This document shows positions 9,575 to 61,677 of a stretch of DNA of 64,000 nt, piece after piece. The notes under the pieces are model-generated. The model worked only from the letters and a program-made list of their open reading frames with translations, was not told where the DNA came from and made no database searches. The stretch lies in contig CDRNST010000040.1 in assembly GCA_977016875.1 (NCBI GenBank), positions 930,001-994,000 of the forward strand. Direction: 5' to 3'. The DNA comes from Pavona decussata. Its lineage: Eukaryota. Made by a program: the position numbers and the translations under genes. Positions within the stretch are counted from its first letter, which is position 1. Each line of letters opens with the position of its first letter.

Positions 9575-9624
9575 ATGGCAATAATACCGCTAATTGTGTT
9601 CTTTGTTGCTGCTTGGAACTATCG
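9575..9624 (+). CDS. Exon 1: signal peptide MAIIPLIVFFVAAWNY(R)
   Basis: Hydrophobic N-terminus, donor CG|GTAAGT (phase 2), matches the phase of exon 2. Confidence 0.75.
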
Positions 9625-12600
9625 GTAAGTACGAAAATCATCCATAAGCCATATAATCTCTTCTTAAATTTCTTTCAGTTATTGAAGCTACAGAAGCAAA
9701 ATAAGTTGCGACAAATTGTGTTATCTGAATACAGACAGATCAGATCAGTTTTAGGCTATCTTTTTTGTAGCCAACCAGCTATTTCAAATACAACGAAAAT
9801 GCGTATCATTGTTTTGAAAGGAATAATTATGCGATAGCTTTTGTAAAACTTAGAATTTTTGCCTCGCGTAGCAATTGTGTGAAAAACAAGTGTTTGAGTC
9901 TATTAAAGTAAATTGGGTTAGCTTTTGAAGAGAGATAGATACAAATCAGACGATCACTGATTTCGGGCTTAAAAAGGAACGAAATACATGTTTAACTTCT
10001 TGTGATATCTTCTTAATCCTATTCAATGTCACCTCCCCTGATTTATGGCAACTTTGGCAAGTAGTTTTATTCACCATTTAGACTGAGTTACCGCCTTCAA
10101 TCTGATTCAGTTTTTATTAGGACACCTAAAGCTTTCATATACAGAGGGTCTTGTAAAGTAGCCAAAAGAAAAGGTTTTCCGAGTAGTAACATAATGAACA
10201 GCGCACGTGTCTTTTCATTTCCATGTATGGTAACCGTGTAATTTCACGTATACATTCTAAAAATTTAAAGAGAATCTATATTTGTTATTGCGGTTTATTA
10301 AACTCCTCATCACGTTTTGGGTTCAAGATCAAAGGGTTATCTCTCTCCTACTATATTGTACTCTTATTTCGTACTCACAGCTTTATCCTTTCCAACATTG
10401 ATTAATGAACCCTAAAAACTGACTTATCTTATTCAATCCAAAGTTTTTCATTTCATCACCTCACCAGAGAAAAGCCTATCTGAGATAAAGGGAGACACCT
10501 TTGGGACTCATATACAGAGGGTCTAGTAAAGTAGCCAAAGAAAGGCTTTCTGACCAGTGCCTTTATGTATAGCACAACTCGAATCCTATTAATTTCCATG
10601 CTTGGTACTCGTATAATTTCACGTGTATCATATGAAGATTTAACCAAATCTATTTGTTCTTGGGTATGTTAGACTTTAGATCGTTTTTTCTCGTTTATGT
10701 TTTCGTATTGTCAGCTACTTCTCCGCGGTGTTTAAACTAACAATAACTCCTATCTTTTTCTTTCATTTAAACAGTTTAACCGAAGCTGGCGACGGAGGTA
10801 GGTTGTTGATTGTCTTTTCAGTGACTTGTCTTTTTTATTTGTTTGTTTTTTCTGTTTGTTTTGGAAGTAAATCAGTTTTTAATCAGTTCATGTGGACAGA
10901 GCAAATAAGACGCCGTGCGGCAATTAACGAATCCAACCTTGATTTTAAAACGAATGTTTTGTTTTATCAACTGAGCTGATTAAGCCGCTTTAAAAAGATT
11001 CAAAACCTGATGCCTCGAGCGTTACTCCCTTCGTCAGAGCTTAATTTTGAAAGGAAAAACGTTAAAAAATTTAGCCGAGTAGATGAAGAAACGCGTATGG
11101 CTAGTTTGCACGAAAAACGCGTGGCAACCAATTGATTGAAAACGGATTTAAATACTAAACTTTCGAATGTTTTACGAGACGGATCCTAGGTATGAAAACA
11201 GGAATAAATGCAAATCTAAGATCTTACTCTGTTGAATTCGCTTGTATCATTCATTCCCTGAGAATGGCGTCATGACGTCGCCGAAACGTCGGAACATTAT
11301 ATCGTTAGTTTTTACTTGCCTGTGAAAAAAGAAAGAAAGAAAGAAAAACTATTTTGGTCAGGGAAAGGATCGGAGTTTGGGAAACCCGGCTTCCGTCGAC
11401 TTGTGGAGACTTGATATTTGACAGAGAAATGTTTACCGATTCATGTTTTGGTGCACGGATTTAGAGATCATTTCTGTCTGTTGTTAACCTAAACTTTTCA
11501 TTTATTCAATAGCCATGTGCAAGATGAAGACTGTGGACAACAAATGCTGCGTCTTTCCTTTCGTCTACAGAGGAACAACTTATAATGCATGCGCCTCGGT
11601 CAGGGCTAGTAAACTCTGGTGCAGTCTCTCGCCAAGCTATGACGAGGATAAACAATATGGATACTGTAGAGGTACCTATACAGTAAAGTAAGGGGTAGTT
11701 GACTCTAGGGAAACCTTCAAAGGTTTGTTGTTTAAGGATGAGCAAATCCAGTAAATACTTATCGTGGAGTTTTCTGCACTAAAAAGCCTATTTCCGTATT
11801 TTGGACGCGCGCGAAATGGGGCGAGTTTCTTTCGCGCTCTCGTCCCAATTACCGCGAGGTCAAACAGCGAAGAAAAACACAAACGGAAATGCTTGCTTTG
11901 CAGGCTAGTCGATACTAAAGTAATCGATGCCTCAATTGTGGGTAAATAGTCGATACTTCCAAATGAGTATCGTTTTTTTTTTTTTTTGCGTAGCTTGTGT
12001 ACTTGAAGCATAGTTCGTGGTTAGAGGTAATTCGTATTCCTTTATCCTTCCAGACGAACTATATCACGGTAGCTCGCCTTGACAGACGAATTGCCGTAAA
12101 TAATTCGTATGGACGGATAATCCGTCTGAAAGCCCGTATTTAAACACAGACAAATTATCAGACGAAGTACCGTTCTTTGTCCAAGTTCGTCGCAGACGGA
12201 TGATCCGTCTCTAGTATTTATACTAGACAGATGATTCGTCTTGACGAATGATCCATCCCTAGTATAAATCGAGCCAAGGATTAAACCAATCAGGTAAAAG
12301 TTGAAGGAATCAAACAAACAAACAAACAAACAAACAAACACTGAAAGGTGATCATCATCAACAATATTGAGTCAGCCCTACAACGATGACTGTTTTATCT
12401 TGACAAACGTTAAAATCACGAACATATCATTGACCAGCAAAATCGATTAAACTTTTAGACGATGACTTGCAATTGGATGAAAGAGAGGAGTCTGCTCTGA
12501 AGTTTCAGAATGGTGTATGCACCTTCACTGTTGTATATGGGATTTTGCACGGAGATATAGAGGATATGACACGGCGGTGCGAAGATATGAAGTTTACTTT

Positions 12601-15600
12601 CGAGTTGTAAAAATAATGTTTTAGTGCGTAGCCAGTGGGGAAAATACTGTTTTTAAAAAAAATGAAGTTCATATCTTTAAGCCACCGTGGTATTTTCTTT
12701 TTATTATTTAAGTAAATCTAGCTCTCGCCATTCTTCACTGACTGTTTGCATAAACAACCGTGGAACAGCGGGAAATGACGTCATCGATATCCTCACCAGT
12801 GAGGATATGGAAAATACGCCACTCGAGTCGCGGATGTAGTTTAATTCGTATGCGAGAAGTGTATTTTCCAGTAAAACACTCCTGTCTTAATTAATTAATT
12901 GTTTTGCGGGAACTGGCTTAGAAATGATATCTTTGTCCTACAGGAAACGATCCCCGTTAAATATACCAGTAACTTTCTCAGGAAATACAGTATGCTTTGA
13001 GCTCTAGGCGACTGTAACAGCCGCTTGTTTGTTCCCTGGTAGGAATGGAAGGTAAGCTTAGTGGGGATGATCAGACTTGGGTCTACGCTAACGGACGTTA
13101 CCTTGGAAACGATAATGGCAGATGGAATGTCCCTAACAGGTANNNNNNNNNNNNNNNNNNNNNNNNNNNNNNNNNNNNNNNNNNNNNNNNNNNNNNNNNN
13201 NNNNNNNNNNNNNNNNNNNNNNNNNNNNNNNNNNNNNNNNNNNNNNNNNNNNNNNNNNNNNNNNNNNNNNNNNNNNNNNNNNNNNNNNNNNNNNNNNNNN
13301 NNNNNNNNNNNNNAGTAAATTCATTTGTACGGTCGAAATAGGAGAGATTACTGGTATAGAATCAGGGTTTGCCATCATAATGTTTTGGAGAGAGAGGAAA
13401 AGGAACAAGCCCACATCCAGGAGAAACCGAGATCATTTTCCATGTGTTCTGTCAGAAAGTCGCCAAGTTCCATTAGCCTGGGGAACTTAAGAAATGACAA
13501 CGCCACAAAACAAAAGGCTTAATGAGCAACAACTATTGCTCCACACATGCGTTTTAAATTTTGGGACATTTCTTTGCCATACTCTGCAAAACAACAACTT
13601 GAAATGACCATATTCAAAGTATTGTGGAGAACGTGAACACATGAAGCCGAATTTCTCATTCTCTTTCTTTACTTGAACGCCACTCCTACCAATTTGGTTC
13701 CTGGGTAGTTCGCCGTTCCTGTAGAAGATGAATCGTTGAAATAACCGCGAAGTAGCACAAGTGAAATAAAGTTATATTTTCAAGAGACGTTTTCGTTAAC
13801 CTTGCCGTCGCCGCTGCTTACGTTTCCTATTTTGTGCACACTAAGTCTTACAAGTCGTATAACAAGGCAAATTGAATAAAGTGTTTGGGAATATTTGGAT
13901 ACAAGCATGATGCAAGCATGACTTTCAAAATTGCTTAATTCAAAATTACTTCTCCTAGAAGATGTATCGGCCTTGTCTTTTCCACAACGTATAATAATAT
14001 ATTAATAATACATCATCATAAAGAAGACAACACGCACGATTTTCAACAATTTAGAGCGACACGGCTGCAAGAAACCTCCATTCGTTGCCAATCATTTTTG
14101 AAATATTTTGTCTTCTTAAAAAAACAAACAAACAAACAAACAAACAAGGAAAAAGACAAACAAAACATACAAACTGACTAAGGAGAACCCAAGCAAACCC
14201 AGGCAGAGGATATTATCTGACAGAGATATTTCCATTCAATTTAATTTATTATATAGGGCCTCTATGGATAGCAGTTTTTATCTTGTACAAAAACTGAAGG
14301 AGTTACCCTATTGAAATACAGGTTTCTTATAGATGCGGTAAAAATGCATGCAGGCTGCCACTAAGAGGAGATGGGAGGGTCATTATAAATTGATGTGAGT
14401 TATATGTTGGCGAAAAGATAAAGAAAATCAACACGAACAGGGAAAGGCTGACTTGAATATCAGACAACCGACTCTTTTGGTTGAGCGACTCGATTGCGCA
14501 AGGTTTAGTTTCATGGATATTTTGAGGACAGTAAAATAACTTGCAGTAGTTGCAATATCAAATTTTGAAAACTGCACACGCAAAGCGTGTGCAGATCAAG
14601 ATTCTCTATGCTTTCAGCGGAATAAATAATTGAAGAGTATAACAGATCTGTCTATCATATTTTTCATATTTATTTTAACAGCTTCTACTTCCCAGCCGAT
14701 CTTCAAAGTGTTGCAGTGTACGTGAAAAACAAAGGCGGACTAGCAGGTTTTATCGCGTCGTTCGGGAATGGCATAGTTACGGATGGCACATGGAAATGTA
14801 CAACTCACGGCGTGCGGAACTGGCAAACAGCCGGCTTTGACGATAGCAACTGGCCAGCGGCTGTAGTGCACAGCGAAAACAGTGGCAACGTTAGAGTCAA
14901 CGGAATTGCATCCAATGCAAAGTGGATTGGGCCAAGTCAGAGGAACGCTAATGCAATTTTTTGTAGACGGCGAATGACTCTTTTTGGAGAAACGCCGACC
15001 GTCGGCGGAAGTGAGTGATGTTTTTGCTAACAAGTCGAGTTAAGTTATATAGGGGAGATGGTAATTTTGCGGGTTCGTGTAATACCAGTGGCGTGTGACA
15101 CAAAATAAAGGCGAGTTTTCACTAGGACGTAAGCATAAGCAGAAGCAGAAGCTCAAACGTCGCTTAAGCAAGTGAGAACACCTGCGGCATAAGCATAAGC
15201 ACAAGAAGAACGAACGTGTTCATTCTTCTTGTGCGTATGCTTATGGTTATGTCATGTTATATGCAAGTCGCCGTTTTCACCAGCGAGAGAACAGAATGGA
15301 GGGACGACATAAGCACAAGCAGAAGCACAAGGCAGTCAACCGTTTCGTCCGCCATATTGCTTAACACTGAGGGGAGCTGGTGTCGAGAATTCCGTGAAGA
15401 AATGCTTTTATGCGCGTGCATCTGTCGTTATGCTTATATACAGCTGTAGCTAGTGTTCTCACTTGCTTATGCTTAAGCTTATACTTATGTCCTAGTGAAA
15501 ACCAGCGTTAAACGTGAATGGATAAATGATCATCATGTTACCTTTTGGTGAAACACTATTTTTTTATGAGAGTTTTCTCCCGTACACAACACAGGTTGTG

Positions 15601-51600: not shown

Positions 51601-54600
51601 ACATATCAGGGATATTAAAGTTTTTTAATTTCTTTGGGAAATAAGGCTTTGAATGGCCGACATCAAATCCAGGTCTTGTGATTACGCCGTCGTGTCTCGA
51701 AGTTAGCACGAGCTCAATTGGGGGTGGTTCGTCCGACATGCCAACATGATTTAATGGCAACATATTCCGCCGTAAACCAGTGGTAGATCTATATCCTAGA
51801 AATCATTGCATTCCAAGAAGGCGAACAGTATGAAGTATTCTAGGTGACCGGTAATCTAACCCGTTCATTGGCATACGTCGTAGAAACTTCTGAGGCTTCA
51901 CTGGGATATCACTAGGAATGACAGTCATTTCTTAGTGATAACTAGTTCATAGGCAGTTCAACAGGCTAAGAAAACATTCCGATTACGTTTTAAGGACTCT
52001 ATTAAGAGAAAGAACAACTGGCTTTTGATAGCACAGACTGTAAAATTTCAGGTTAAAAAGGGCAACAGAAAAAATATAAAAGAAAATTAACGAAGAAGAA
52101 AAACTGAGAGTGCATTTCTTTACAGACGAAATTTTTCTTTTCATCTATAAAATTAATCAGTTTATTGTTGGATTATGACACTTTGTGAAACTTATAGGCG
52201 TGTGGTGTCATGCAATTTTTGTGATAAATAATTCTGGATGGTAAACGTTTCAAATCGCCATGCACAAATACAGCCAAGTACTAGCATACGTTTTTAAAAT
52301 ACTGACTTAGGCAACCAATATTGTATTAAGGAAACATCTTTATTACATCACACTACTTGCTTCACTAGTAGATCGTGCGAGTGACGTAATTCCAGCTTAC
52401 TGTGGTACAGTCGAACGTGTATGAAGTGTCACCCTCGGGAAAATGGCTAAGTTACGTGGAACGCTTCATACAGGTTGACGCTTAATACAGGTTGCACAGA
52501 ATACGCGTCGAACACACTTACTTTGTTAAGAAACGTCAGCGATGAAATGGTATGACAAAAGAAAACATGATATAGAAACGGACTAACAAAACATTAATGG
52601 GAAAGAAACAAATCGTTGGAACTTAGTGAAGGATGACCACGACCGCTTAAGAGAAGTGACTGTGTTTAATGGTCTCTGTCTGTTGATGTGTTTAGATTAC
52701 CGTGCAACAGAACAGTTGTGACGGCTTACCTCAGTCTTGCCCGGCGGGGCCTGTAACCGAGACTCGTACCTCTATGTGCACGTGTCAATCCGTGTCTTGC
52801 TCGTGGGGAGCGTGGGGAAATTGGTCTGGTAAATGTGGCACGGTCAACAGAACACGCCACATTGTGGAGAACCAGACAACGGTTCAAGCTGAAAACTGTG
52901 ATGCAGTTCCAAAGAAATGCATGCAACAGCCGGAAACTGAGAACAACAAACTTCCAGATTGTAAGTGTTTCCGGAAATGCTTGTTAGGGATTCCATTATG
53001 CGTGCTGCATCGACCTTTATTGCTTTTTTCCATTGTTTGATTTTAAAGGGGCACTGTCTCGTCGATTTTGCTGGATTTTGGTCGAAACGGCTCAAATATA
53101 AATATATATAATCACTTTTAGTGGTTTTCGACAATACACATAGACAACTTGCTATTAAAAAAAATTGGCAAGCCGAAGATAATTAATACTAGTTTCTGTG
53201 CATTAGTAGGGTTATTGCTAAATCAACTGAATCATTATTTTGACCATTTCATCAATTCAAATATGTTTTTTGGCCAATCAAAGTGAGACAAAAAATAGGC
53301 CCCTTTAATGTTTGGCAACTTTTCGACCTCCTTTGATAGGTTTGTAATGGCTTTGATCTCAACGGGCCGATCAACGTGCAAATCATTTGCAAGGCGAAGT
53401 CGATTTCTAATAGCCTGTTCCAGGCTCCTAGAGAGAAGCGCGAAGGAGAGGGCGAGGGGACGAAAACGAGGGGGGCTGGGGAGAGAAAAAGAGGGAAAGA
53501 AGAGGAGCCTGTAATCATTCTCTTAAATACCTCATGCCGGTATACCAGCTCCCGGTATACCCTCTGATTGGTCAGTTTTGACAGTTCAGACATCACTCAA
53601 AAGATATCGCGAAAGAATCTGAAAGAGTCAAAATGGCGAGTGTGTCACACGCGCGTGGTTTTGATGAGACTGAGTTTAATACAGTTTTAGAGAATTGTCT
53701 TCGAGATTTTCCGCAAGTTAAAGTACTCAGGAAGGAGCAAAAAGCTTGCCTTCTCAATCTAGCTCGTGGGAAAGACGTTTTCGCCATTCTACCCACCGGT
53801 TTCGGGAAGAGCTTGATATTTCAACTGTTTCCTCGAGTCTCGAGTGCTTTGTGCTCAAGTGAAGTCAAGCCGTTGTCAACCATTATAGTGGTTTTCTCCG
53901 TTGGTTTCAGTGATAAGAGATCAGGTCGAGCAGTTAAAACAACTAGGGTTCTCGGCCGCAGCAATAGGAATTGGCGACGAATGTATAACAAATGCTATAG
54001 CTCTCGAAAGCAAGAGACAACAATGATAAGCTTTGAAAGACGAGGATCTGTTAGACACTCATATCCGTGATAAACAAACATCCTGCGGCAGTTTCAATCT
54101 TCCCGAAGTGATATGCAATAGCATAAGCATGAATTCACAAGTAAAGAACTCCACGGATCCTGTATCTTCACAGATAAAATTTATTTAGCGCTACCTGAAA
54201 TCTTGCAGTTAATCCTAGCCGCTAAACTTTAACAAATGCCACAGAGCTAGCATACACAATGGCATATCAAAATCTAATCCTAACGGCTCAGAATGATCAG
54301 TAAGAAACTCTCCATTCAGTTTATATGAGAATTCCCCCTCACGATTAAGATGAATAACATTAAGCAGAGCCGTCGCATCACGTTTTGATCAAAAGGGAAG
54401 AAGCTCTTATACAAAAGGAAAATCGCTTAAAGACATGCTTGCATTGTAAAAGCTTTTATCAAAACAACGCACACACAGTGGGAGTCGTGCAGGTCTGTCA
54501 ACCGCATTTTAACATATTTAAACGTGCCATAAATTCTGGCCAGGATCCTCGCACAAATGAGGCAGCTGACGCTGGAAAGCTCTTCGTTTCTCAATAGCTT

Positions 54601-56987
54601 GCGAAGATACAACCAAGCGAAGACACAACATCTGCCAACACTAGAGTCTCGTCGCTCGATAACGTCGCGTTAATAAGTTCCTTATTTCGAACAGCGTTGA
54701 ACAAGTACACCCGGGGAACTTTCGTTCCAAGACACGTCAAATTTTTTTGGCAAAATCTACAGGATTTTGAGGGTTGAAATCTCAAACCCGGAGAACCTTT
54801 CGGTGTCCGCGACATCGAAGCGATGTAAGGACAACCGCGCGAACTCGAGAACTCGCGTGAGTAATCGAAACCCGGACAATGAAAAGTTTGACATTTTGAC
54901 ATGTTGACACATTTTGGAAAAAGTGGGCGGCATGAGGTGTTTAAGAGAATGATTACAGGCTCCTCTTCTTTCCCTCTTTTCCTCTCCCCCACCCCCGTCG
55001 TTTTCGTCCCCTCGCCCTCTCCTCCGCGCGTCTCTCTAGGAGCCTGGAACAGGCTAATTTTAATTTCTAACAGCGACTTTGCCTCACGAATACGTGCGCT
55101 CTATTCGCACAGCTGTGGTAGTAACCAATAAAAATTTATCATGAAGATCCCAAAAGTTCTCAAAGCTAATGTTATAAGTTCAGTCTCTACACCTAAAAAA
55201 GAAAGGAGCTTGTCTCTTTATTACTACAAATAATCATTTTCCTTTTTTTCAAAGACCATTCATGTTTTGAAATAGACAGCATTTGCTATTATAGCCACTA
55301 TTATTGTTTGAGTTACTGTAACGCTGCATGATAAAGATTGAGTTAAATCTTCAGTTAAATCGTTTCTGTTATATTGCCAATGGTACCCGCTAAAAGAAAT
55401 AAAGAGTTGGAACGAAACCTTTCTTGCGAGGTGCTTTAAGTTGCTTCCAAAATTCAAGAAAATATAGATATCTTTCGCGTTTGGAATCGTGGAAATTTTT
55501 AAACAAGAAAGGAGTTTGTCTCTTTGTTATTAGAAATACCCATTTCCATTTTTTTTTTCATGCAAAGACCGTTAATTTTTGTAATAGACAGAATTTGCCA
55601 CTATTATTATTTACTGTAACTCTGCGTGATAAAGACTGAGCCATAAATTCTGTTAAATCGTTTCTGTTATATTGCCATTATATGTTAACCGATAAAAGAA
55701 ATAAAAAGTTTGAGCGAAACATTTTTCGCGTTTGGAAATCGTGGAAATTATTAAACTTCATTAACACCCCATCTCCCTATTTGTCAGGTAATTATATTTT
55801 AACAAGTCATCTCTGTTCTTCCACTTACATTCCGTGGCACTCGGCTTCAAGACAAAACTCTTGTGCCACAGTAGAAAGTACGATTTTCAAGTATTCTATC
55901 TGTTTTACTCCTTTAAACTGTTGTTATAAGGTGAGGAATGCTTTACGGTGGAATGCAGTTACAATCCTTGGGGCGCCTGGTCTGCAACCTGTGGCAATGC
56001 GATTAGGCAACGTACACAGGTAATCAAGGAAATCCTGATGATGCTACCGAGTTGTGTTGGGCTTCCCTTGGAATGCTTCGGAGATCAAGTTCAGGAAGAA
56101 AGGAGAAACACCCCAATATGTAAGGATAAAATTATATACGAAAATTGAAGGTCCGTAAACAGGATTCATATATAGTAGTACTCACAAAATGTTCTCTGGT
56201 TATTAGTTATAGTAGTTAATAGTTATAATGGATAAAACGTTCTCTGGTTAACAGTTTAATATTCTAATATTTTGGCTTCCCCGGGCTTTCTTGCCTCGTT
56301 AATGTTTCCTTAATATCATATCTGTGAGTGTGTAAATGTGAGGAAAATCAATAAACTGAACTGAACTTTGAGCTTTCGAAAAGTTGTCAAAAGTTCATAG
56401 ATTTTTAAACTTTTAACCAGGGAAAGTTTTATCATTACTACGACAAAATAATAATTGAGGAATCTTGAGAAGACATAGCTAGGGCGTTGAACTTGAAATA
56501 TGGCAGCTCTCGGTCCTAGGCCTGTTTTTTTGTTTTTTGGTCAGTTCCGTTTGCCAGTACAGACGACTCCTGATAACTCGAACCTTCAAGGGAATTCATA
56601 AAGGTTCGAGTTATCGGGAGTTCGACAACAACNNNNNNNNNNNNNNNNNNNNNNNNNNNNNNNNNNNNNNNNNNNNNNNNNNNNNNNNNNNNNNNNNNNN
56701 NNNNNNNNNNNNNNNNNNNNNNNNNNNNNNNNNNNNNNNNNNNNNNNNNNNNNNNNNNNNNAAGAAAGAAATTATAATCAATTTTGATTTGAACAAGAAA
56801 GTCGGTTGTTGTTGATCCAACAAATGTTGTACAATAATGTTAGATCGTTTAGCCGGGGCTTAAGACCCCTTTCACCTTAACAGGTATGTAAAGTAAAATA
56901 GTGCATTAAGACAATTTATTGAAGTGTCTGCACAACTCTTGTCTTCCAGGTCCGACCACAAAACCCACTTCAAATCCAACCAACTGA
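9575..56987 (+). CDS. Multi-exon gene (37 coding exons, about 2158 aa): secreted FN2 / CBM67-like / F5-8C / 3x vWA / 20x TSR mosaic protein (coadhesin- or TRAP-like extracellular adhesion/lectin protein)
   Basis: Exons joined by hand through GT-AG sites. Phases match at every junction and the total of 6477 nt is open from ATG 9575 to TGA 56985-56987. No transmembrane segment or obvious GPI signal at the C-terminus (...CPTTKPTSNPTN*). Confidence 0.88.
10121..10690 (+). repeat. Diverged direct repeat (about 10121-10330 vs 10494-10690) in intron 1
   Basis: Shared GACACCT..CATATACAGAGGGTCT.GTAAAGTAGCCAAAG..TTTCCATG..GGTA..CGT.TAATTTCACGT. Confidence 0.75.
10775..10797 (+). CDS. Exon 2: 23-nt microexon (R)LTEAGDG, end of signal peptide
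   Basis: tttcatttaaacag|TTTAACC...GGAG|gtaggt. Phase 2 in, phase 1 out. Provides a plausible TEA|GD cleavage site. Confidence 0.7.
11254..11294 (+). ncRNA. Hammerhead-like motif (variant core) in intron 2
   Basis: TTCC-CTGAGAAT-GGCG TCATGACGT CGCC-GAAACGTC-GGAA. Confidence 0.5.
11513..11671 (+). CDS. Exon 3: fibronectin type II (FN2) domain
   Basis: Translates to MCKMKTVDNKCCVFPFVYRGTTYNACASVRASKLWCSLSPSYDEDKQYGYCR, matching the FN2 pattern C-x-FPF-x-Y...WC...YD-x-D-xx-[WY]GYC. Phase 1-1. Confidence 0.9.
13043..13139 (+). CDS. Exon 4: N-half of CBM67-like lectin domain
   Basis: GMEGKLSGDDQTWVYANGRYLGNDNGRWNVPN. AG and GT boundaries, phase 1 to 2. Confidence 0.8.
14682..15010 (+). CDS. Exon 5: C-half of CBM67-like lectin domain
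   Basis: FYFPADLQSVAVYVKNKGGLAGFIASFGNGIVTDGTWKC...WQTAGFDDSNWPAA...AKWIG...IFCRR. Donor A|GTGAGT. Confidence 0.85.
15109..15508. mobile_element. PIF/Harbinger-type MITE
   Basis: TAA|AGGCGAGTTTTCACTAGGAC...GTCCTAGTGAAAACCAGCGT|TAA, with subterminal AGCATA repeats. Confidence 0.8.
15595..15770 (+). CDS. Exon 6: F5/8 type C (discoidin) domain, part 1
   Basis: CDRPLGLQSGWVENNQMTASSVWDGKHAAWRGRL...GAWSAKYNNPNQWIQ. Confidence 0.92.
16390..16533 (+). CDS. Exon 7: F5/8 type C domain, part 2
   Basis: ISFHRPMKINALATQGRADFNQWVTSYTLSYSEDG... Phase 0-0. Confidence 0.92.
17035..17176 (+). CDS. Exon 8: F5/8 type C domain, part 3
   Basis: VFSANSDRNTVVKH...IEARFVRLHPKTWRAGISMRMELYGC. Donor G|GTAAGT. Confidence 0.92.
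17757..17990 (+). CDS. Exon 9: vWA domain 1, part 1 (MIDAS DESGS)
   Basis: CKVDVGILMDESGSV...QFGVITFS. Confidence 0.92.
18846..18934 (+). CDS. Exon 10: vWA domain 1, part 2
   Basis: GGWTYTSKALNLAYNQLFTAAKGARANVAK, 89 nt. Confidence 0.9.
20111..20348 (+). CDS. Exon 11: vWA domain 1, part 3
   Basis: VLIVITDGKATGG...IISVGVG...ELRFMAS. Confidence 0.92.
20749..20937 (+). CDS. Exon 12: TSR-like repeat 1
   Basis: CRYVVCDYNTWGAWSATCGTGMRRTR...C..C. Phase 1-1. Confidence 0.9.
22120..22296 (+). CDS. Exon 13: TSR-like repeat 2
   Basis: CPCISVACSWNLWGSWSSTCGRMTRQR. Confidence 0.9.
22625..22780. repeat. Imperfect palindrome made of two inverted, degenerate hammerhead-bearing segments
   Basis: TTTTGAAAACACGTTTCGACAGCTCTTTTGTTATCTTT ... 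AAAGATGACAGAAGAGCTGCCGAAACTTGTTTTCAAAA. Confidence 0.75.
22888..23124 (+). CDS. Exon 14: vWA domain 2, part 1
   Basis: CKGELGILMDESGSI...QMGVITYS. Confidence 0.92.
24760..24848 (+). CDS. Exon 15: vWA domain 2, part 2
   Basis: GGWTYTSKALNIAKNQLFHSSYGARSGVSK, 89 nt. Confidence 0.9.
25585..25822 (+). CDS. Exon 16: vWA domain 2, part 3
   Basis: ILIVLTDGATTGG...IFAIGIG...ELELMAT. Confidence 0.92.
26375..26577. mobile_element. piggyBac-like MITE
   Basis: TTAT|CCCTATCTAGACCGGG...CCCGGTATAGATAGGG|TTAA. Confidence 0.65.
26792..26980 (+). CDS. Exon 17: TSR-like repeat 3
   Basis: CKYVTCEYSVWSSWSSSCGSGMNRKR. Confidence 0.9.
27771..27807 (-). ncRNA. Minimal type I hammerhead ribozyme motif of the Penelope element
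   Basis: Minus strand reads TTCCA-CTGATGA-AGGGC TAA GCCC-GAAA-CATC-TGGAA: stem I TTCCA/TGGAA, canonical core, stem II. Confidence 0.8.
27891..30665 (-). pseudogene. Penelope polyprotein of about 924 codons, interrupted by one TAA (30215-30213)
   Basis: 150 aa (MSSTKDF...KTVKDS), then TAA, then an immediately in-frame ATG opening the 773-aa RT/GIY-YIG ORF. Confidence 0.8.
30803..30979 (+). CDS. Exon 18: TSR-like repeat 4
   Basis: CPCKYVTCAWNPWGGWSATCGRMTRQR. Confidence 0.9.
32070..32721. mobile_element. PIF/Harbinger non-autonomous element with a MADF (Myb/SANT-like) remnant
   Basis: TAA TSD, TIR AGGCTGGTTTCCATATGATCGC, subterminal GATCGCA repeats. Minus strand reads YECVY..SRRDFNDKNKKASYWDKIG...SAEEAEAKF / NIRTAYGRY. 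Confidence 0.85.
32789..33025 (+). CDS. Exon 19: vWA domain 3, part 1
   Basis: CKVELGVIMDESGSI...QMGVITFS. Confidence 0.92.
34312..34400 (+). CDS. Exon 20: vWA domain 3, part 2
   Basis: GGWTFTDRALQLAKTQLFTSSNGARPGVTK, 89 nt. Confidence 0.9.
34447..35443 (+). repeat. Near-perfect tandem duplication (about 497-bp unit) including the acceptor and first 63 nt of exon 21
   Basis: 34447-34944 matches 34944-35443, differing visibly only in A-run length. Confidence 0.95.
35381..35618 (+). CDS. Exon 21: vWA domain 3, part 3
   Basis: ILLIVTDGASNSG...IFSVGVG...ELEFMAS. Confidence 0.92.
36381..36569 (+). CDS. Exon 22: TSR-like repeat 5
   Basis: CKYVTCDYSLWSSWSISCGKGMKRKR. Confidence 0.9.
37157..37333 (+). 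CDS. Exon 23: TSR-like repeat 6
   Basis: CQCNYVTCSWNEWSSWSATCGVSTRQK. Confidence 0.9.
38003..38270 (+). CDS. Exon 24: 1.5 TSR-like repeats
   Basis: CPCRSVRCTWKPWTGWSATCG...CTCLTVQCAWSQWSDWSASCG. Donor CA|GTGAGT, phase 2. Confidence 0.9.
38905..39050 (+). mobile_element. tRNA-derived SINE, with a related degenerate copy at about 8268-8410
   Basis: TAGCTCAGTGGTTAGAGC...GGTTCGATTCC followed by a T-rich tail. No acceptor-stem pairing. Confidence 0.75.
39091..39272 (+). CDS. Exon 25: TSR-like half+half
   Basis: DTQVTVQKESCDGLPQSC...CACRTVSCTWEEWSSWSTTCG. Confidence 0.88.
39652..39839 (+). CDS. Exon 26: TSR-like, B-type (188 nt)
   Basis: ETLITVNKPSCAGLPQKC...CTCPTVECRWNEWTDWSATCG. Confidence 0.9.
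40126..40300 (+). mobile_element. tRNA-head SINE (second family)
   Basis: TGGCGCAGTAGTGAGAGCACTCGCCTCC...GTTCGGTTCCC box A/B-like head. Confidence 0.6.
40578..40749 (+). CDS. Exon 27: TSR-like, A-type (172 nt)
   Basis: TTVQKLKCEGLPQSC...CKCKTVNCEWAMWSSWSTTCG. Confidence 0.9.
41582..41769 (+). CDS. Exon 28: TSR-like, B-type
   Basis: ETVVEIFKPDCSGLPQSC...CSCPTVNCNWKEWSAWSATCG. Confidence 0.9.
42035..42984. mobile_element. Tc1/pogo-type MITE (TA TSD)
   Basis: TA|CAATCGAACCAGGTCAAGCGTACCCCCCTAGA...TCTAGGGGGGTACGCTTGACCTGGTTCGACTG|TA. Confidence 0.85.
44958..45018 (+). pseudogene. Truncated A-type TSR exon fragment
   Basis: tgtacag|ACAACAGTTCAGCAAGTGAAATGTGAAGGTTTGCCTCAGTCGTGT (TTVQQVKCEGLPQSC), then runs into intron sequence and a stop. 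Confidence 0.85.
45084..45255 (+). CDS. Exon 29: TSR-like, A-type
   Basis: 172 nt, near-identical to exons 27, 31 and 33. Confidence 0.88.
45829..46016 (+). CDS. Exon 30: TSR-like, B-type
   Basis: 188 nt, near-identical to exons 28 and 32. Confidence 0.88.
46058..46250. mobile_element. TA-flanked MITE, with a paralogous copy at about 48270-48460
   Basis: TACAGTTAGCTCTCG..CGGACACC...GGTTGATTGTA. Same position relative to a B-type exon in both copies. Confidence 0.7.
46718..46889 (+). CDS. Exon 31: TSR-like, A-type
   Basis: 172 nt, cag|ACC...G|gtaagc. Confidence 0.88.
47036..47406. mobile_element. TTAA-flanked (Kolobok-like) MITE, with an inverted copy at about 43305-43674 and a related element at about 53047-53324
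   Basis: TTAA|AGGGGAAATATCA...TGATACTTCCGCT|TTAA. Internal sequence is reverse-complementary to 43305-43674. Confidence 0.65.
48056..48243 (+). CDS. Exon 32: TSR-like, B-type
   Basis: 188 nt, ccag|AA...AAG|gttatc. Confidence 0.88.
48946..49117 (+). CDS. Exon 33: TSR-like, A-type
   Basis: 172 nt, cag|ACC...G|gtaagc. Confidence 0.88.
51141..51328 (+). CDS. Exon 34: TSR-like, B-type with a divergent 3' half
   Basis: ETVVEVFKPDCSSLPQSC...CKWSEWSDWSATCGPATRQK. Donor GTAAGT. Confidence 0.9.
52696..52960 (+). CDS. Exon 35: 1.5 TSR-like repeats
   Basis: ITVQQNSCDGLPQSC...CSWGAWGNWSGKCG...KLPDC. Confidence 0.9.
53411..55056. mobile_element. Non-autonomous Academ(H)-like DNA transposon with long TIRs and a RecQ helicase fragment
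   Basis: Termini TAGCCTGTTCCAGGCTCC...GGAGCCTGGAACAGGCTA with about 130-bp imperfect TIRs. Left arm has a RecQ-type fragment (DVFAILPTGFGKSLIFQ). Right arm has a convergent CxxC...CxxC ORF remnant. Confidence 0.75.
53633..53981 (+). pseudogene. Truncated, frameshifted RecQ-like SF2 helicase N-terminus
   Basis: Motif 0 LRKEQ and motif I LPTGFGKS. Removing one extra T at about 53893 restores motif Ia VVSPLVSVIRDQVEQL. Confidence 0.85.
55238..55755 (+). repeat. Diverged tandem duplication (about 55238-55505 vs 55541-55755)
   Basis: Shared AAAGACC..AATAGACAG..GTTAAATCGTTTCTGTTATATTGCCA..TAAAAGAAATAAA..TTTCGCGTTTGGAA. Confidence 0.75.
55931..56119 (+). CDS. Exon 36: last TSR-like repeat
   Basis: CEECFTVECSYNPWGAWSATCGNAIRQR. 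Confidence 0.9.
56950..56987 (+). CDS. Exon 37: final coding segment CPTTKPTSNPTN*
   Basis: ttgtcttccag|GT CCG...TGA. Phase 1 completes the final Cys. Donor GAG|GTAGGT 9 nt after the stop. The gap at 56633-56761 could hide more sequence. Confidence 0.7.
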
Positions 56988-60633: not shown

Positions 60634-61677
60634 ATGAATTCTAGCGAGACTCACCAGAGCCAAAGTCCACAATCGTTGACCGAATGTGACTTGTTTCTTT
60701 TTCTGGGCGGAAGGCTTGATCCTACTAACACCAGAGCTTACGCGGCGCTCGTGTGCATAGCGATCTTCAGCCTTGTCACCTTTCCGATTGTCACTGTTTT
60801 GAACGCACTTGTCATAGCGGCTATCAGCACAAAACCGCCGCTGAAAACCATGTCTAACATTGCACTCGGCTGTTTGGCAACCACCGATGGGTTAACGGGA
60901 ATGATTGGTCAACCTCTGTTTGCTGTGTGGATATTAACAACTCTACAAGGAGAGGGGTATGCTTATTGCTCGTTGCAAAATTTATCTAGAAACTCACTCA
61001 GGGTATTGATTGGCGCATCTTTTTTCCATCTGGTCTTGTTGAATCTGGAGCGGTACATAGCAATAAAACACTCTTTAGAATACAACACTATGGTGACCAA
61101 ATTTCGCATACTTATTTCTTCCTCTATCGCCTGGATAACAATGTCACTCCTTACTATATCTTTAACCATCGTAGACAATACCGTTTACGTAACGGTATCT
61201 AATATTATCTTGTGTGTATGTATGGCCGTCACTGTCTTCTGTCAAGTCGTTCTTGGTTGCGAGACTCGCCGCCACGAAAGAGAAATCGCTGCTCATTATG
61301 CCTCTGTGGGAGCAAGACAAAAATTCTTAAAAGAGAAAAAGGCTTTAAAAGTAACAACTACTGTACTATTAATGTTGGTCTTGACATATTCGCCTATATT
61401 GATCGTTCGATTACTAATAATAAAATCAGTTATCGTCTCAGTAAGCACAGCTTACATTGCTTTCTTCATCGCAACGTTTGTGTTAATTCTCAATTCGTTT
61501 ATTAACCCGGTAATTTACTGTGTCAGAATGAGACAATTTCGTGTAGCGTTTATGGAAATTGCTGTCAGGAAGCGTAGCACAGAAACTGAGAAAATTAAAT
61601 CTGTGACAGCAATTGAAGAAGGACGGAAAACAGGAGAACAACAACACAACACAAAACCGGGAACCTGTTTCGCTTGA
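60634..61677 (+). CDS. Intronless class A (rhodopsin-family) GPCR, 347 aa
   Basis: Seven hydrophobic segments, TM1 N, TM2 LA..D, TM3 LERY, TM4 W, TM6 TYSP, TM7 NSFINPVIY, helix 8 FR.AF. Confidence 0.93.
   Translation: MNSSETHQSQSPQSLTECDLFLFLGGRLDPTNTRAYAALVCIAIFSLVTFPIVTVLNALVIAAISTKPPLKTMSNIALGCLATTDGLTGMIGQPLFAVWILTTLQGEGYAYCSLQNLSRNSLRVLIGASFFHLVLLNLERYIAIKHSLEYNTMVTKFRILISSSIAWITMSLLTISLTIVDNTVYVTVSNIILCVCMAVTVFCQVVLGCETRRHEREIAAHYASVGARQKFLKEKKALKVTTTVLLMLVLTYSPILIVRLLIIKSVIVSVSTAYIAFFIATFVLILNSFINPVIYCVRMRQFRVAFMEIAVRKRSTETEKIKSVTAIEEGRKTGEQQHNTKPGTCFA

What the first reader, a model, noticed from the sequence alone, without database searches (positions are those of the whole stretch)
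9575..56987. Giant secreted multi-lectin/adhesion mosaic: FN2 + CBM67-like + discoidin + 3 vWA + 20 TSR
Seen: 37 phase-compatible exons give about 2158 aa with a signal peptide and no TM segment. All three vWA domains keep a complete MIDAS (DESGS, the T in GWTYT/GWTFT, the D in TDG). Known: vWA+TSR pairing defines apicomplexan TRAP/MIC2/CTRP adhesins and cnidarian TRAP-like proteins, F5/8C+TSR+vWA occurs in coral coadhesin, and rhamnose-lectin+TSR occurs in hydroid rhamnospondin. Inference: this protein puts three ligand-binding heads (collagen-type FN2, sugar-binding CBM67-like, discoidin) on a long TSR stalk. I do not recognise this combination from any characterised protein. It is a candidate for microbe/symbiont recognition, mucus, or skeletal-matrix function.
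Basis: partly seen in the sequence, partly recalled or inferred. Interest (0 to 1): 0.8.

Follow-up and report, generated by a model that had tools for sequence, protein, structure and literature searches.

The report
Secreted coral lectin–vWA–TSR adhesion protein gene
This is one real, expressed stony-coral gene for a 2158-residue secreted "sticky rod" protein (three binding heads, three metal-dependent vWA domains, 20 thrombospondin-type repeats); the same gene is already predicted in other corals and sea anemones, but nobody has studied it.

Summary
I rebuilt the gene independently. It has 37 GT-AG exons (9575-56987, + strand), a 6477-nt ORF and 2158 aa, with an N-terminal signal-like segment and no other hydrophobic segment. 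All three N gaps lie inside introns. The residues on either side of each gap are colinear with the orthologues, so no exon is missing.

Spliced RNA-derived contigs from four studies join exons 5-11 exactly as modelled.

Domain calls:
- FN2, F5/8C and 3 vWA domains (each with a full MIDAS) pass Pfam.
- The "CBM67-like" domain is real. Its profile matches the Pleurotus lectin POL (E 2.5e-28) and the CBM67 of SaRha78A (E 6.5e-15). A pLDDT-93 model finds the same folds, and the Ca/sugar Asp-Asp motif is kept.
- The 20 "TSRs" fail Pfam, even in full-length orthologues. However, every PDB sequence hit and all of the top 50 fold hits are TSRs, so they are divergent TSRs that lack the CSVTCG motif.

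The architecture is not unique. Full-length orthologues exist in Pocillopora, Stylophora, Oculina, Montipora and Nematostella, with a shorter model in Actinia. All are "uncharacterized", and one is mis-named collagen XII. I found no paper that mentions them.

Presence in non-calcifying, non-symbiotic anemones argues against a role specific to the skeleton or to symbiosis. The most likely role is a secreted, divalent-cation-dependent glycan/collagen bridging matrix protein.

Other first-stage notes of this scan (s1-480705, s1-480780) had already flagged the CBM67-like domain and the A/B exon stalk on this same stretch of DNA.

The parts
9575..9624 (+). Exon 1: start codon and hydrophobic signal-like segment (MAIIPLIVFFVAAWNY)
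   Evidence: ATG at 9575 and donor GT at 9625. It resembles the orthologue N-termini. It holds the top Kyte-Doolittle window of the protein.
10775..10797 (+). Exon 2: 23-nt mini-exon (R-LTEAGDG-A) that restores the reading frame between exon 1 and the FN2 exon
   Evidence: It is the best AG..GT candidate that is stop-free and in phase. The peptide is identical to Oculina LTEAGDGA.
11513..11671 (+). Exon 3: FN2 (fibronectin type II) domain
   Evidence: Pfam fn2 E 3.2e-16, full-length match. 72% identical to P. verrucosa.
13043..13139 (+). Exon 4: first part of the CBM67-like lectin domain, with the Asp86-Asp87 Ca/sugar motif (13066-13071)
   Evidence: Colinear with the orthologues. The DD aligns with the POL DD. 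DD is kept in all orthologues.
14682..15010 (+). Exon 5: rest of the CBM67-like beta-jelly-roll domain
   Evidence: RNA contigs cover this exon. 763 relatives were found. Profile A1 matches POL at E 2.5e-28 and 3W5M residues 175-303 at E 6.5e-15. The fold search agrees.
15595..15770 (+). Exon 6: F5/8C discoidin domain, part 1
   Evidence: Pfam F5_F8_type_C. Splice joint 15010>15595 is seen in RNA contigs.
16390..16533 (+). Exon 7: F5/8C discoidin domain, part 2
   Evidence: Pfam E 6.5e-9. Splice joints are seen in 4 runs.
17035..17176 (+). Exon 8: F5/8C discoidin domain, part 3
   Evidence: Pfam E 1.8e-7. Splice joints are seen in 4 runs.
17757..17990 (+). Exon 9: vWA1 part 1 with MIDAS DESGS
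   Evidence: Pfam VWA E 1.2e-14. Splice joints confirmed.
18846..18934 (+). Exon 10: vWA1 part 2 (GGWTYT)
   Evidence: Pfam VWA. Splice joints confirmed.
20111..20348 (+). Exon 11: vWA1 part 3 (ITDG)
   Evidence: Pfam VWA E 5.9e-12. RNA contigs end at the donor 20348 and run on 0.5-3 kb beyond the laid stretch.
20749..20937 (+). Exon 12: TSR-like unit 1
   Evidence: Colinear with the orthologue at 76%. Member of alignment A2.
22120..22296 (+). Exon 13: TSR-like unit 2
22888..23124 (+). Exon 14: vWA2 part 1 (DESGS)
   Evidence: Pfam VWA E 9.7e-18.
24760..24848 (+). Exon 15: vWA2 part 2 (GGWTYT)
   Evidence: Pfam VWA. Junction confirmed.
25585..25822 (+). Exon 16: vWA2 part 3 (LTDG)
   Evidence: Pfam VWA E 9.3e-13.
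26792..26980 (+). Exon 17: TSR-like unit 3
30803..30979 (+). Exon 18: TSR-like unit 4
32789..33025 (+). Exon 19: vWA3 part 1 (DESGS)
   Evidence: Pfam VWA E 4.6e-14.
34312..34400 (+). Exon 20: vWA3 part 2 (GGWTFT)
   Evidence: tblastn with the orthologue, 75% identity. Junction confirmed.
35381..35618 (+). Exon 21: vWA3 part 3 (VTDG)
   Evidence: Pfam VWA E 1e-11.
36381..36569 (+). Exon 22: TSR-like unit 5; its donor GTAAG abuts the N gap at 36575
   Evidence: The junction peptide DMDC-QC matches the orthologue.
37157..37333 (+). Exon 23: TSR-like unit 6
38003..38270 (+). Exon 24: TSR-like unit 7 and the start of unit 8
   Evidence: Unit 7 was folded (pLDDT 89). All of the top 50 fold hits are TSRs.
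39091..39272 (+). Exon 25: end of unit 8 and start of unit 9
   Evidence: Weak Pfam TSP_1 hit, E 9e-4.
39652..39839 (+). Exon 26: B-like stalk exon (188 nt)
40578..40749 (+). Exon 27: A-type stalk exon (172 nt), pair 1
41582..41769 (+). Exon 28: B-type stalk exon (188 nt), pair 1
45084..45255 (+). Exon 29: A-type stalk exon, pair 2
45829..46016 (+). Exon 30: B-type stalk exon, pair 2
46718..46889 (+). Exon 31: A-type stalk exon, pair 3
48056..48243 (+). Exon 32: B-type stalk exon, pair 3
48946..49117 (+). Exon 33: A-type stalk exon, pair 4
51141..51328 (+). Exon 34: B-like stalk exon, pair 4 (more diverged)
52696..52960 (+). Exon 35: end of unit 18, unit 19, start of unit 20
   Evidence: 78% identical to the orthologue.
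55931..56119 (+). Exon 36: last TSR-like unit (20)
   Evidence: Weak TSP_1 hit, E 0.016.
56950..56987 (+). Exon 37: Pro/Thr-rich tail (C-PTTKPTSNPTN) and TGA stop
   Evidence: It matches the orthologue tails CPTTKPPPTPTT. It has no hydrophobic end.

Best explanation
The region holds a single expressed stony-coral gene. It is the orthologue of a Hexacorallia-wide but unstudied gene family (for example N. vectensis LOC5506315 and S. pistillata LOC111323994).

Shown here:
- The product starts with a signal-like N-terminus.
- It carries a three-domain head: FN2, a CBM67-type beta-jelly-roll lectin that keeps the Asp-Asp calcium/sugar motif, and an F5/8C discoidin domain.
- Three cassettes of one vWA domain plus two TSR-like units follow. 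Each vWA has a complete MIDAS site. The closest solved relatives are collagen VI, mussel PTMP1 and the collagen-binding integrin I domains.
- A rod of 14 more divergent TSRs comes next, then a short Pro/Thr tail.
- There is no membrane anchor.

Inferred:
- The protein is secreted into matrix or mucus.
- It works as a long multivalent bridge that depends on Ca2+/Mg2+. The head would bind glycans (rhamnose/galactose-type sugars through CBM67, galactose-type sugars or lipid through discoidin) and collagen-like partners (through FN2).
- The three MIDAS vWA domains would bind collagen or other acidic protein ligands.
- The TSR rod would act as spacer and further adhesive surface.
- Rod length is tuned by duplicating or losing A/B exon pairs (172 + 188 nt = exactly two TSRs). 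There are four pairs here, against three in P. verrucosa and two in Stylophora and Oculina.
For: Gene structure: the 37-exon GT-AG model has an intact 2158-aa ORF.

Expression and splicing: contigs of 4 runs from 4 studies skip 7 introns at exactly the modelled GT..AG sites. They continue up to about 3 kb past exon 11.

Orthology: identity is 74-79% over the full length to Pocillopora and Oculina, and 56% to Nematostella, with the same order of domains.

Domains:
- Pfam detects fn2, F5_F8_type_C and VWA.
- The CBM67 profile hits POL and SaRha78A. The AF2 model has pLDDT 93 and Foldseek finds POL, 3W5M and 3W5N.
- The DD motif aligns to the POL DD, which PMC11512411 describes as the Ca2+/sugar site.
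- TSR: all 13 PDB profile hits and all of the top 50 fold hits are TSRs.
- The nearest solved relatives of the vWA domain are collagen VI alpha3, PTMP1 and integrin alpha1/alphaM/alphaX I domains. Those of the discoidin domain are factor VIII/V C domains, neuropilin and lactadherin.

No TM segment. The orthologues end in the same tail.

A/B pair arithmetic and copy numbers.
Against: - No ligand, location or phenotype is known for any family member, so the bridging mechanism is inferred from domain families alone.
Only one reads call was allowed, so continuity rests on contig lengths and on the orthologue models.
- Signal-peptide cleavage was not predicted with a dedicated tool.
- The Pro that contributes to sugar binding in POL is Leu here (KGGLAG), so sugar specificity, or binding itself, may differ.
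- The TSR units lack the CSVTCG motif, which PMC5446238 describes (with GVQTRXR) as an SRB1/CD36-binding motif. Canonical TSR ligands may therefore not apply.
Confidence: 0.6

Rival explanations
1. The protein is a soluble pattern-recognition or agglutinating molecule for microbes or algal symbionts. The CBM67 lectin would capture rhamnose- or galactose-rich microbial surfaces in mucus or in the gastric cavity. The vWA/TSR rod would tether or aggregate them. This would be a functional analogue of hydrozoan rhamnospondin, built with a different lectin fold.
For: - The CBM67 family binds L-rhamnose, GalNAc and melibiose in solved complexes (6KC2, 6LI7, 6T1D, 3W5N).
- The Ca/sugar DD motif is conserved in all orthologues.
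- Rhamnospondin (a rhamnose lectin plus 8 TSRs) was proposed to bind microbes, and TSR proteins promote symbiont colonisation (PMC5446238).
- The coral genome holds at least 20 further CBM67-like exons. In Oculina the domain is fused to a tyrosine kinase, and a weak partial kinase hit is also seen in Desmophyllum. This looks like a recognition-receptor repertoire.
Against: - The gene is equally conserved in non-symbiotic Nematostella.
- Its TSRs lack the CSVTCG motif that PMC5446238 links to SRB1/CD36 binding.
- No expression or binding data exist.
- FN2 and collagen-type vWA domains point at host matrix rather than at microbes.
Confidence: 0.2
2. The protein is a skeletal organic-matrix or calicoblast-to-skeleton adhesion protein, like coadhesin.
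For: vWA/TSR adhesion proteins (coadhesin, hemicentin-like) recur in coral skeletal proteomes (PMC3748352; the bioRxiv 2026 D. pertusum skeletome).
Against: - Orthologues exist in the skeleton-less anemones Nematostella and Actinia.
- The Stylophora orthologue XP_022783192 does not appear in the main-text tables or the held supplements of Peled et al. 2020. A different gene, coadhesin-like XP_022783415, is listed there.
- Coadhesin-like proteins carry canonical TSP_1 repeats that Pfam detects. This family does not.
Confidence: 0.07
3. The long model is an artefact. It would be two or more neighbouring genes (a lectin head gene and a vWA/TSR gene), or a mis-assembled repeat region, merged by reading exons in phase.
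For: - Three assembly gaps lie in the region.
- The stalk consists of 85-94% identical tandem units.
- A 99.6% identical 497-bp tandem duplicate lies at 34447-35443.
- Exons 12-37 were not checked with reads here.
Against: - RNA contigs join the head (CBM67, discoidin) to vWA1 in four studies and run on for up to about 3 kb.
- Independent RefSeq and GenBank models in at least 6 species show the same single protein from signal peptide to PT tail.
- Every junction is in phase with GT-AG, and no orthologue residues are missing at any gap.
Confidence: 0.04

Closest known systems
Predicted hexacoral orthologues (P. verrucosa XP_058973551, S. pistillata XP_022783192 / PFX30136, O. patagonica LOC144638092, N. 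vectensis LOC5506315)
   Same: They share the same domain order from signal peptide to Pro/Thr tail. Identity is 74-79% for the scleractinians and 56% for Nematostella. All keep 3 MIDAS sites and the DD motif.
   Different: The window protein has four A/B TSR exon pairs, against 3 in P. verrucosa and 2 in Stylophora and Oculina. It is therefore 120-240 aa longer. None of the orthologues has been studied experimentally. One carries the misleading automatic name 'Collagen alpha-1(XII)'.
Pleurotus ostreatus lectin POL and the CBM67 module of Streptomyces avermitilis rhamnosidase SaRha78A
   Same: They share the beta-jelly-roll fold and the sequence family: profile E 2.5e-28 for POL and 6.5e-15 for SaRha78A, and Foldseek probability 1.00. 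The Asp-Asp motif of the Ca2+/sugar site is conserved.
   Different: Here there is a single copy embedded in an animal multidomain protein, not a tandem fungal lectin or an enzyme module. The Pro of the POL site is Leu here. The bound sugar is unknown.
Coadhesin (A. millepora B3EWZ3) and coadhesin-like proteins
   Same: They are secreted cnidarian mosaics that combine vWA and many TSRs (PMC3748352). The discoidin domain is seen in coadhesin-type hits such as Actinia LOC116298543.
   Different: It is a different gene: in Stylophora, coadhesin-like is XP_022783415 and this orthologue is XP_022783192. Coadhesin-type proteins have canonical Pfam TSP_1 repeats and no FN2 or CBM67 head. Only local similarity is seen, for example 39% over 15% of the query to the Actinia F5/8C+TSP_1+VWA protein.
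Hydractinia rhamnospondin
   Same: The logic is the same: a sugar lectin (rhamnose-type) fused to a run of TSRs in a secreted cnidarian protein.
   Different: By my own knowledge of that family, rhamnospondin uses a SUEL/RBL-type lectin domain. Here the lectin is CBM67-type, and no Gal_Lectin hit was seen in Pfam scans. This protein also has FN2, discoidin and 3 vWA domains.
Apicomplexan TRAP/MIC2 adhesins
   Same: A MIDAS-bearing vWA domain is followed directly by a TSR. TRAP and MIC2 TSRs are among the PDB hits.
   Different: TRAP/MIC2 are type I membrane proteins with a cytoplasmic motor-linking tail. This protein has no TM segment.
Collagen VI alpha3 N-domains / mussel byssus PTMP1 / integrin alpha I domains
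   Same: They are the closest solved vWA relatives: E 2e-81, 7e-36 and about 1e-19 to 6e-21 respectively.
   Different: This protein has no collagen triple helix, no FN3 domains and no integrin context.

Membership tests
von Willebrand factor A domain (PF00092) with MIDAS | Pfam VWA match above the gathering score | tested here: met
   The first and last exons of each of the three domains score 45.8-65.4 bits against a cutoff of 23.8. The short middle exons of vWA1 and vWA2 score 21.8 and 20.7 bits; the vWA3 middle exon was placed by tblastn only. The orthologues score 420-427 bits with 3 stretches.
von Willebrand factor A domain (PF00092) with MIDAS | Complete MIDAS: DxSxS, a Thr in the GxTxT loop, and an Asp in the TDG strand | tested here: met
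   DESGS is at aa 384, 693 and 1003. GGWTYT/GGWTFT is at 452, 762 and 1072. I/L/VTDG is at 486, 796 and 1106. Metal binding itself cannot be tested here.
F5/8 type C (discoidin) domain | Pfam F5_F8_type_C match covering the whole profile | tested here: met
   Three exons match profile positions 1-39, 40-82 and 86-127. The orthologues score 87-98 bits. PDB relatives are factor VIII/V C domains at E 1e-45.
Fibronectin type II domain | Pfam fn2 match over the full 42-residue profile, with four Cys | tested here: met
   E 3.2e-16, 59.5 bits, profile positions 1-42 of 42.
CBM67 (Ca2+-dependent L-rhamnose-type carbohydrate-binding module; SaRha78A domain D, POL lectin) | Sequence homology to solved CBM67 modules | tested here: met
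   Profile A1 matches POL 6T0Q/6T1D/6KBJ at E 2.5e-28 and 3W5M residues 175-303 at E 6.5e-15. The single P. verrucosa orthologue domain (P0156:76-222) matches POL at E 3e-8. The Pfam Bac_rhamnosid_N hit is only weak.
CBM67 (Ca2+-dependent L-rhamnose-type carbohydrate-binding module; SaRha78A domain D, POL lectin) | Beta-jelly-roll fold | tested here: met
   The AF2 model of the P. verrucosa orthologue domain has pLDDT 93.3. That domain is 69-81% identical to the window exons. The top Foldseek hits are POL and 3W5M/3W5N, with probability 1.00 and TMq 0.44-0.59.
CBM67 (Ca2+-dependent L-rhamnose-type carbohydrate-binding module; SaRha78A domain D, POL lectin) | Conserved acidic pair of the Ca2+/sugar site | tested here: met
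   GDD (aa 85-87) aligns to SDD/ADD of POL. PMC11512411 names the two Asp as the Ca/sugar ligands. The pair is conserved in all orthologues and in most of the family.
CBM67 (Ca2+-dependent L-rhamnose-type carbohydrate-binding module; SaRha78A domain D, POL lectin) | Ca2+-dependent sugar binding | not testable with these tools
   This needs recombinant protein and glycan binding assays with and without EDTA.
Thrombospondin type 1 repeat (TSR) | Pfam TSP_1 / TSP1_spondin / TSP1_ADAMTS match above the gathering score | tested here: not met
   The best exon hit is TSP_1 at 19.8 bits against a cutoff of 21.6. Full-length orthologues with 15-18 units give no TSP_1 hit at E<=0.1.
Thrombospondin type 1 repeat (TSR) | TSR fold (three-stranded, Trp/Arg ladder) and homology to solved TSRs | tested here: met
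   Profile A2 gives 13 PDB hits at E<=10, and all are TSRs. They include F-spondin at 1.2e-3, TSP-1, TRAP, BAI1, isthmin and MIC2. The model of window unit 7 has pLDDT 89. All of the top 50 Foldseek hits are TSRs, with probability up to 0.99 but E>=0.05.
Thrombospondin type 1 repeat (TSR) | WxxW ladder, RxR motif, six Cys | tested here: met
   The invariant columns are C, C, W, W, S, C, G, R, C, C, and the second Arg of RxR is nearly invariant (90% or more). The consensus is CxxVxCxWNxWSxWSATCGxxxRxRT...CxGLPxxC...C.
Thrombospondin type 1 repeat (TSR) | CSVTCG motif (described with GVQTRXR as an SRB1/CD36-binding motif in PMC5446238; also the CxxS/TCxxG O-fucose site, from my own knowledge) | tested here: not met
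   The units read W-S-A-T-C-G. The first Cys of the motif is replaced by the third Trp. PMC5446238 reports CSVTCG in the cnidarian TSRs it catalogued.
TRAP/MIC2 adhesins | Type I transmembrane anchor and cytoplasmic tail | tested here: not met
   There is no hydrophobic segment after the N-terminus. The protein ends in an 11-residue Pro/Thr tail, as do all orthologues.
Coadhesin family (coral skeletal matrix protein) | Orthology to coadhesin and presence in skeletal proteomes | tested here: not met
   The Stylophora orthologue XP_022783192 differs from coadhesin-like XP_022783415. It is absent from the main-text tables and held supplements of PMC7115838. The B3EWZ3 sequence itself was not compared.
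Collagen XII (automatic name of PFX30136) | Collagen triple-helix repeats and FN3 domains | tested here: not met
   There are no Collagen or fn3 Pfam hits in the orthologues. True collagen XII hits share only the vWA part, at 28-29% over 25% of the query.
Rhamnospondin | SUEL/RBL-type rhamnose-binding lectin domain (PF02140) | tested here: not met
   There is no Gal_Lectin hit in the window exons or the orthologues. The lectin domain is CBM67-type instead.

The most novel reading that the evidence does not exclude
Hexacorals use a microbial/fungal-type CBM67 calcium lectin, mounted on a rod of cryptic TSRs that standard domain scans miss, as a secreted capture molecule for rhamnose- or galactose-bearing microbes or algal symbionts. 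This would be a convergent counterpart of hydrozoan rhamnospondin. It would belong to a wider and so far unnoticed CBM67-based recognition repertoire in corals: at least 20 further CBM67-like exons in this genome, including receptor-tyrosine-kinase fusions in other corals. The reach of the rod would be tuned between species by gain and loss of A/B exon pairs.
Probability: 0.15. Interest if true: 0.7.

Novelty: new variant of a known kind. Interest (0 to 1): 0.42.

Why it matters
The result gives a base-accurate, transcript-supported model of a very large cnidarian extracellular protein. It also corrects how the family should be read.

- The family is not collagen XII and not coadhesin.
- It carries a CBM67-type lectin that animal annotations do not report.
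- About two thirds of its length is TSRs that Pfam-based surveys of cnidarian TSR proteins would have missed.

The gene is single-copy and conserved from Nematostella to reef corals. It is therefore a tractable candidate (knock-out, in situ hybridisation and a glycan array in Nematostella) for asking how anthozoan matrix or mucus binds glycans and collagen. The variation in A/B exon-pair copy number is a clean example of rod-length evolution by in-frame exon-pair duplication.

The gene is not a new kind of system. All of its domains and the general "lectin + vWA + TSR" logic are known.

Tried and rejected
- Pfam scans of the TSR-like exons and of full-length orthologues gave no hit above threshold. 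I therefore moved to PDB profile and fold searches.
- A Pfam scan of 48 CBM67-like domain sequences gave no family at E<=0.01. Pfam does not cover this animal/fungal branch.
- Full-text searches for 12 accession or locus identifiers of the orthologues found no papers.
- The Nematostella matrisome paper (PMC12549020) does not mention FN2, discoidin or rhamnose. Its 10 held supplements hold none of the accessions. NV2-type gene ids could not be mapped, so absence from that matrisome is not shown.
- The Stylophora skeletal proteome (PMC7115838) does not list the orthologue.
- One literature search (CBM67 plus cnidarian terms) was badly targeted and says nothing.
- Fujimoto et al. 2013 (PMC3636921) is not held. 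The CBM67 ligand residues other than the acidic pair therefore come from PMC11512411 only.
- Exon 1 spliced directly to the FN2 exon was rejected as out of phase. The 23-nt mini-exon solves this.
- An alternative last exon by read-through after 56119 (…PICKDKIIYEN*) was rejected. The orthologue tails match the spliced exon 37.

- The joined 2158-aa model was built only inside scripts, for phase, length and motif checks. It was not sent to any search, fold or family tool. Searches used single exons by reference, or public orthologues as proxies.
- The N gaps were not filled or looked up.
- SignalP and DeepTMHMM are not available. Only a hydropathy scan was done.
Full report
**Setting.** The window is eukaryotic DNA (35-48% GC). 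It lies on contig C40 of a 602-Mb assembly. The finding covers a long multi-exon gene on the + strand.

**Checking the observation.** I listed all stop-free stretches on the + strand and scanned them exon by exon against Pfam.
- FN2: E 3.2e-16 at 11488-11688.
- F5/8C discoidin: split over three exons that match profile positions 1-39, 40-82 and 86-127.
- Three vWA domains: each split over three exons. The large exons score 45.8-65.4 bits against a cutoff of 23.8.
The best was TSP_1 at 19.8 bits against a cutoff of 21.6.
- The "CBM67-like" exon gave only a faint Bac_rhamnosid_N hit (E 0.12).

**Relatives.** A full HMMER search with the second CBM-like exon (window:14683-15009) found 763 relatives. 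One was a 1832-aa Nematostella protein. Its Pfam profile is FN2, then an unassigned stretch where my exon hits, then F5/8C, then 3 vWA.

Cluster look-up and a word search then gave full-length proteins of the same build:
- Pocillopora verrucosa XP_058973551, 2038 aa
- P. meandrina CAH3116256
- Stylophora pistillata XP_022783192, and PFX30136 with the automatic name "Collagen alpha-1(XII) chain"
- Oculina patagonica LOC144638092
- a Montipora foliosa protein
- Nematostella vectensis LOC5506315
- Actinia tenebrosa LOC116308348, a shorter 1302-aa model of the same family

All are labelled uncharacterized.

**Gene model.** tblastn of the P. verrucosa protein on the window is colinear from residue 24 to 2027, at 57-93% identity per exon. 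For every intron I enumerated GT donors and AG acceptors that keep both flanking frames open. In each case the candidate that reproduces the orthologue's junction peptide is at or near the top of the splice-score ranking.

Exon 1 (ATG at 9575) is out of phase with the FN2 exon. A scan for an intervening exon found a 23-nt mini-exon at 10775-10797. Its peptide, R-LTEAGDG-A, is identical to the Oculina N-terminus.

The last exon (56950-56987) encodes C-PTTKPTSNPTN-stop. This matches the CPTTKPPPTPTT tails of the orthologues.

The assembled model has 37 exons, all GT-AG, 6477 nt and 2158 aa, with one terminal stop. I built the joined model only inside scripts.

**The gaps.**
- Gap 13143-13313 follows the donor GT at 13140, which is the start of intron 4.
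- Gap 36575-36723 follows the donor GTAAG at 36570, which is the start of intron 22.
- Gap 56633-56761 lies in the last intron.

Across each gap the exons are in phase. The junction peptides (…NVPN-SFYF…, …DMDC-QCNY…, …TPIC-PTTK…) align to the orthologues without any missing residue. A hidden coding exon, including a TM exon in the last gap, is therefore not needed and is unlikely. An optional alternative exon cannot be excluded. I did not fill or look up any N.

**Expression and splicing.** Fifteen runs guessed to be RNA hold 8-13% of the sampled words of 14600-20400, which fits exon-only coverage. I laid contigs of four of them, from four studies. Each gave one long contig that skips 7 introns with GT..AG ends at exactly the modelled boundaries:
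- 15010>15595
- 15770>16390
- 16533>17035
- 17176>17757
- 17990>18846
- 18934>20111
- the contig piece then ends at the donor at 20348

The contigs join the CBM67 exon, the discoidin exons and vWA1 in one molecule. They also carry 0.5-3.0 kb of further sequence beyond exon 11 and up to 435 nt before exon 5. This fits a long transcript, but it was not mapped because only one reads call is allowed. At the 5' side the contigs leave the genome at 14676. The six shared bases equal the last six bases of exon 4, as expected for the 13139>14682 junction.

**The CBM67-like domain.** An alignment of 48 family members (A1) used as a profile hits the Pleurotus ostreatus lectin POL (6T0Q/6T1D/6KBJ, both of its tandem domains) at E 2.5e-28. 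It hits residues 175-303 of the Streptomyces avermitilis rhamnosidase 3W5M at E 6.5e-15.

An AlphaFold model of the P. verrucosa orthologue domain has pLDDT 93.3. That domain is 69-81% identical to the window's two exons. Its best Foldseek matches are POL (the apo form and complexes with melibiose, rhamnose and GalNAc) and 3W5M/3W5N, at probability 1.00.

PMC11512411 describes this family as calcium-dependent, with two conserved Asp as the Ca2+/sugar ligands. These align to Asp86-Asp87 of the window protein. They are conserved in all orthologues and in most family members. A Pro that contributes to the POL site is Leu here.

The domain is not unique to this gene. The same genome has at least 20 further CBM67-like exons in clusters. 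In Oculina the domain sits on a protein with a full tyrosine-kinase domain; a Desmophyllum protein with the domain gives only a weak partial kinase hit. It also occurs in an annelid protein with PAN domains.

**The TSR-like units.** Twenty units of about 60 aa share the consensus CxxVxCxWNxWSxWSATCGxxxRxRT…CxGLPxxC…C. Even full-length orthologues with 15-18 units give no Pfam TSP_1 hit.

A profile of 33 units (8 taken directly from window exons) finds 13 PDB sequences at E<=10. Every one is a TSR: F-spondin (E 1.2e-3), TSP-1, TRAP, BAI1, isthmin and MIC2. A model of window unit 7 (pLDDT 89) finds only TSRs among its top 50 fold matches, including properdin, BAI1, semaphorin-5A, TSP-1, UNC5, ADAMTS13, TRAP and CSP. 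Probabilities reach 0.99, but E-values are weak (>=0.05), as expected for a 60-residue domain.

I accept them as divergent TSRs. They differ from canonical ones in that the first Cys of CSVTCG is replaced by the third Trp. The motif that PMC5446238 describes, together with GVQTRXR, as SRB1/CD36-binding is therefore absent. From my own knowledge, the CxxS/TC O-fucosylation consensus is absent too, while the WxxW C-mannosylation motifs remain.

**The other domains.** The nearest solved relatives of the vWA domain are collagen VI alpha3, mussel byssal PTMP1 and the I domains of integrins alpha1, alphaM and alphaX. Those of the discoidin domain are factor VIII/V C domains, neuropilin and lactadherin. 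Each vWA keeps DESGS, the GGWT(Y/F)T loop and TDG.

**Stalk architecture.** From exon 26 on, the rod is built of alternating 188-nt and 172-nt exons with phases 1>0 and 0>1. Only an A+B pair (360 nt, two TSRs) can be gained or lost in frame, and exon borders are out of register with domain borders.

Four A/B pairs are present here. They share 85-94% DNA identity, which extends into the intron flanks. P. verrucosa has three A-type units, and Stylophora and Oculina have two. Protein lengths step by 120 aa: 1918, 2038 and 2158. A truncated A-type pseudo-exon lies at 44964-45041.

**What it most likely does.** The following is shown: one gene, expressed and spliced; no TM segment; the domain set above.

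The following is inferred from the families:
- The protein is secreted.
- It is a long, multivalent bridge that depends on divalent cations.
- It links glycans (through CBM67 and discoidin) with collagen-type or other matrix ligands (through FN2 and three MIDAS vWA domains).
- The TSR rod acts as a spacer and adhesive surface.

The gene is conserved in Nematostella and Actinia, which have neither skeleton nor algal symbionts. That argues against a function specific to calcification or symbiosis. The Stylophora orthologue does not appear in the skeletal-protein table or held supplements of PMC7115838, where a different gene, coadhesin-like XP_022783415, is listed. A microbe- or symbiont-recognition role, a rhamnospondin-like logic with another lectin fold, remains a live rival.

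**Novelty.** No held paper cites any orthologue accession. The Nematostella matrisome paper and its supplements do not mention them. So the family is known only as unannotated predictions.

The window gene is a new orthologue, and the longest seen here, of that family. The family itself is a new variant of the known lectin/vWA/TSR secreted adhesion proteins, not a new kind of system.

Two earlier first-stage notes on this same DNA (s1-480705, s1-480780) pointed to the CBM67-like domain and to the A/B exon stalk. Both hold up under test.

Noticed in passing
window 27891-30212 (- strand), inside intron 17: An intact 773-aa ORF with a weak reverse-transcriptase match (RVT_1, E 9e-5). By eye it has a GIY-YIG-like motif near the C-terminus. 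It is a candidate Penelope-like retroelement inserted antisense in the gene. The local GC content rises to 48%.
   Followed up: partly
window 34447-34944 and 34944-35443: A direct tandem duplicate of about 497 bp at 99.6% identity. It copies the acceptor and the first 63 nt of exon 21 (vWA3). The upstream copy would give a decoy exon that runs into a stop. It may be a very recent duplication or an assembly artefact.
   Followed up: partly
window 44964-45041: A truncated remnant of an A-type TSR exon (…KCEGLPQSCP… then stops) lies just upstream of exon 29. It looks like a decayed copy left by the A/B pair duplications.
   Followed up: partly
window 53582-54067 (+), inside intron 35: A 162-codon open stretch with a weak DEAD/DEAH helicase N-terminal match (E 6.4e-5; motif ILPTGFGKS). 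It is probably a fragment of a mobile element or a pseudogene.
   Followed up: partly
window 60634-61677 (+): An intronless 347-aa ORF with several hydrophobic segments lies 3.6 kb downstream of the gene. By eye it looks like a rhodopsin-type GPCR. It was not scanned.
   Followed up: no
G000 contigs C64 (449-513 kb), C124 (0.96-1.08 Mb), C213, C120, C44, C164; loci L002-L006: At least 20 further CBM67-like exons (31-40% identical), mostly in clusters, lie elsewhere in the same genome. In Oculina the domain sits on a tyrosine-kinase protein (P0009); a Desmophyllum protein (P0007) shows a weak partial kinase hit. This is an expanded and undescribed animal CBM67 family.
   Followed up: partly
window 15134-15506 and 18264-18503 (introns 5 and 9): Many short RNA-run contigs, 90-95% alike and at high depth, lie here with loose ends and strand-switch joints. 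These are intronic repeat or transposon fragments that are expressed from other copies.
   Followed up: no
window 13140-13142 and 36570-36574: Two of the three N gaps begin 3-5 bases after a splice donor, right at the exon-intron border.
   Followed up: no
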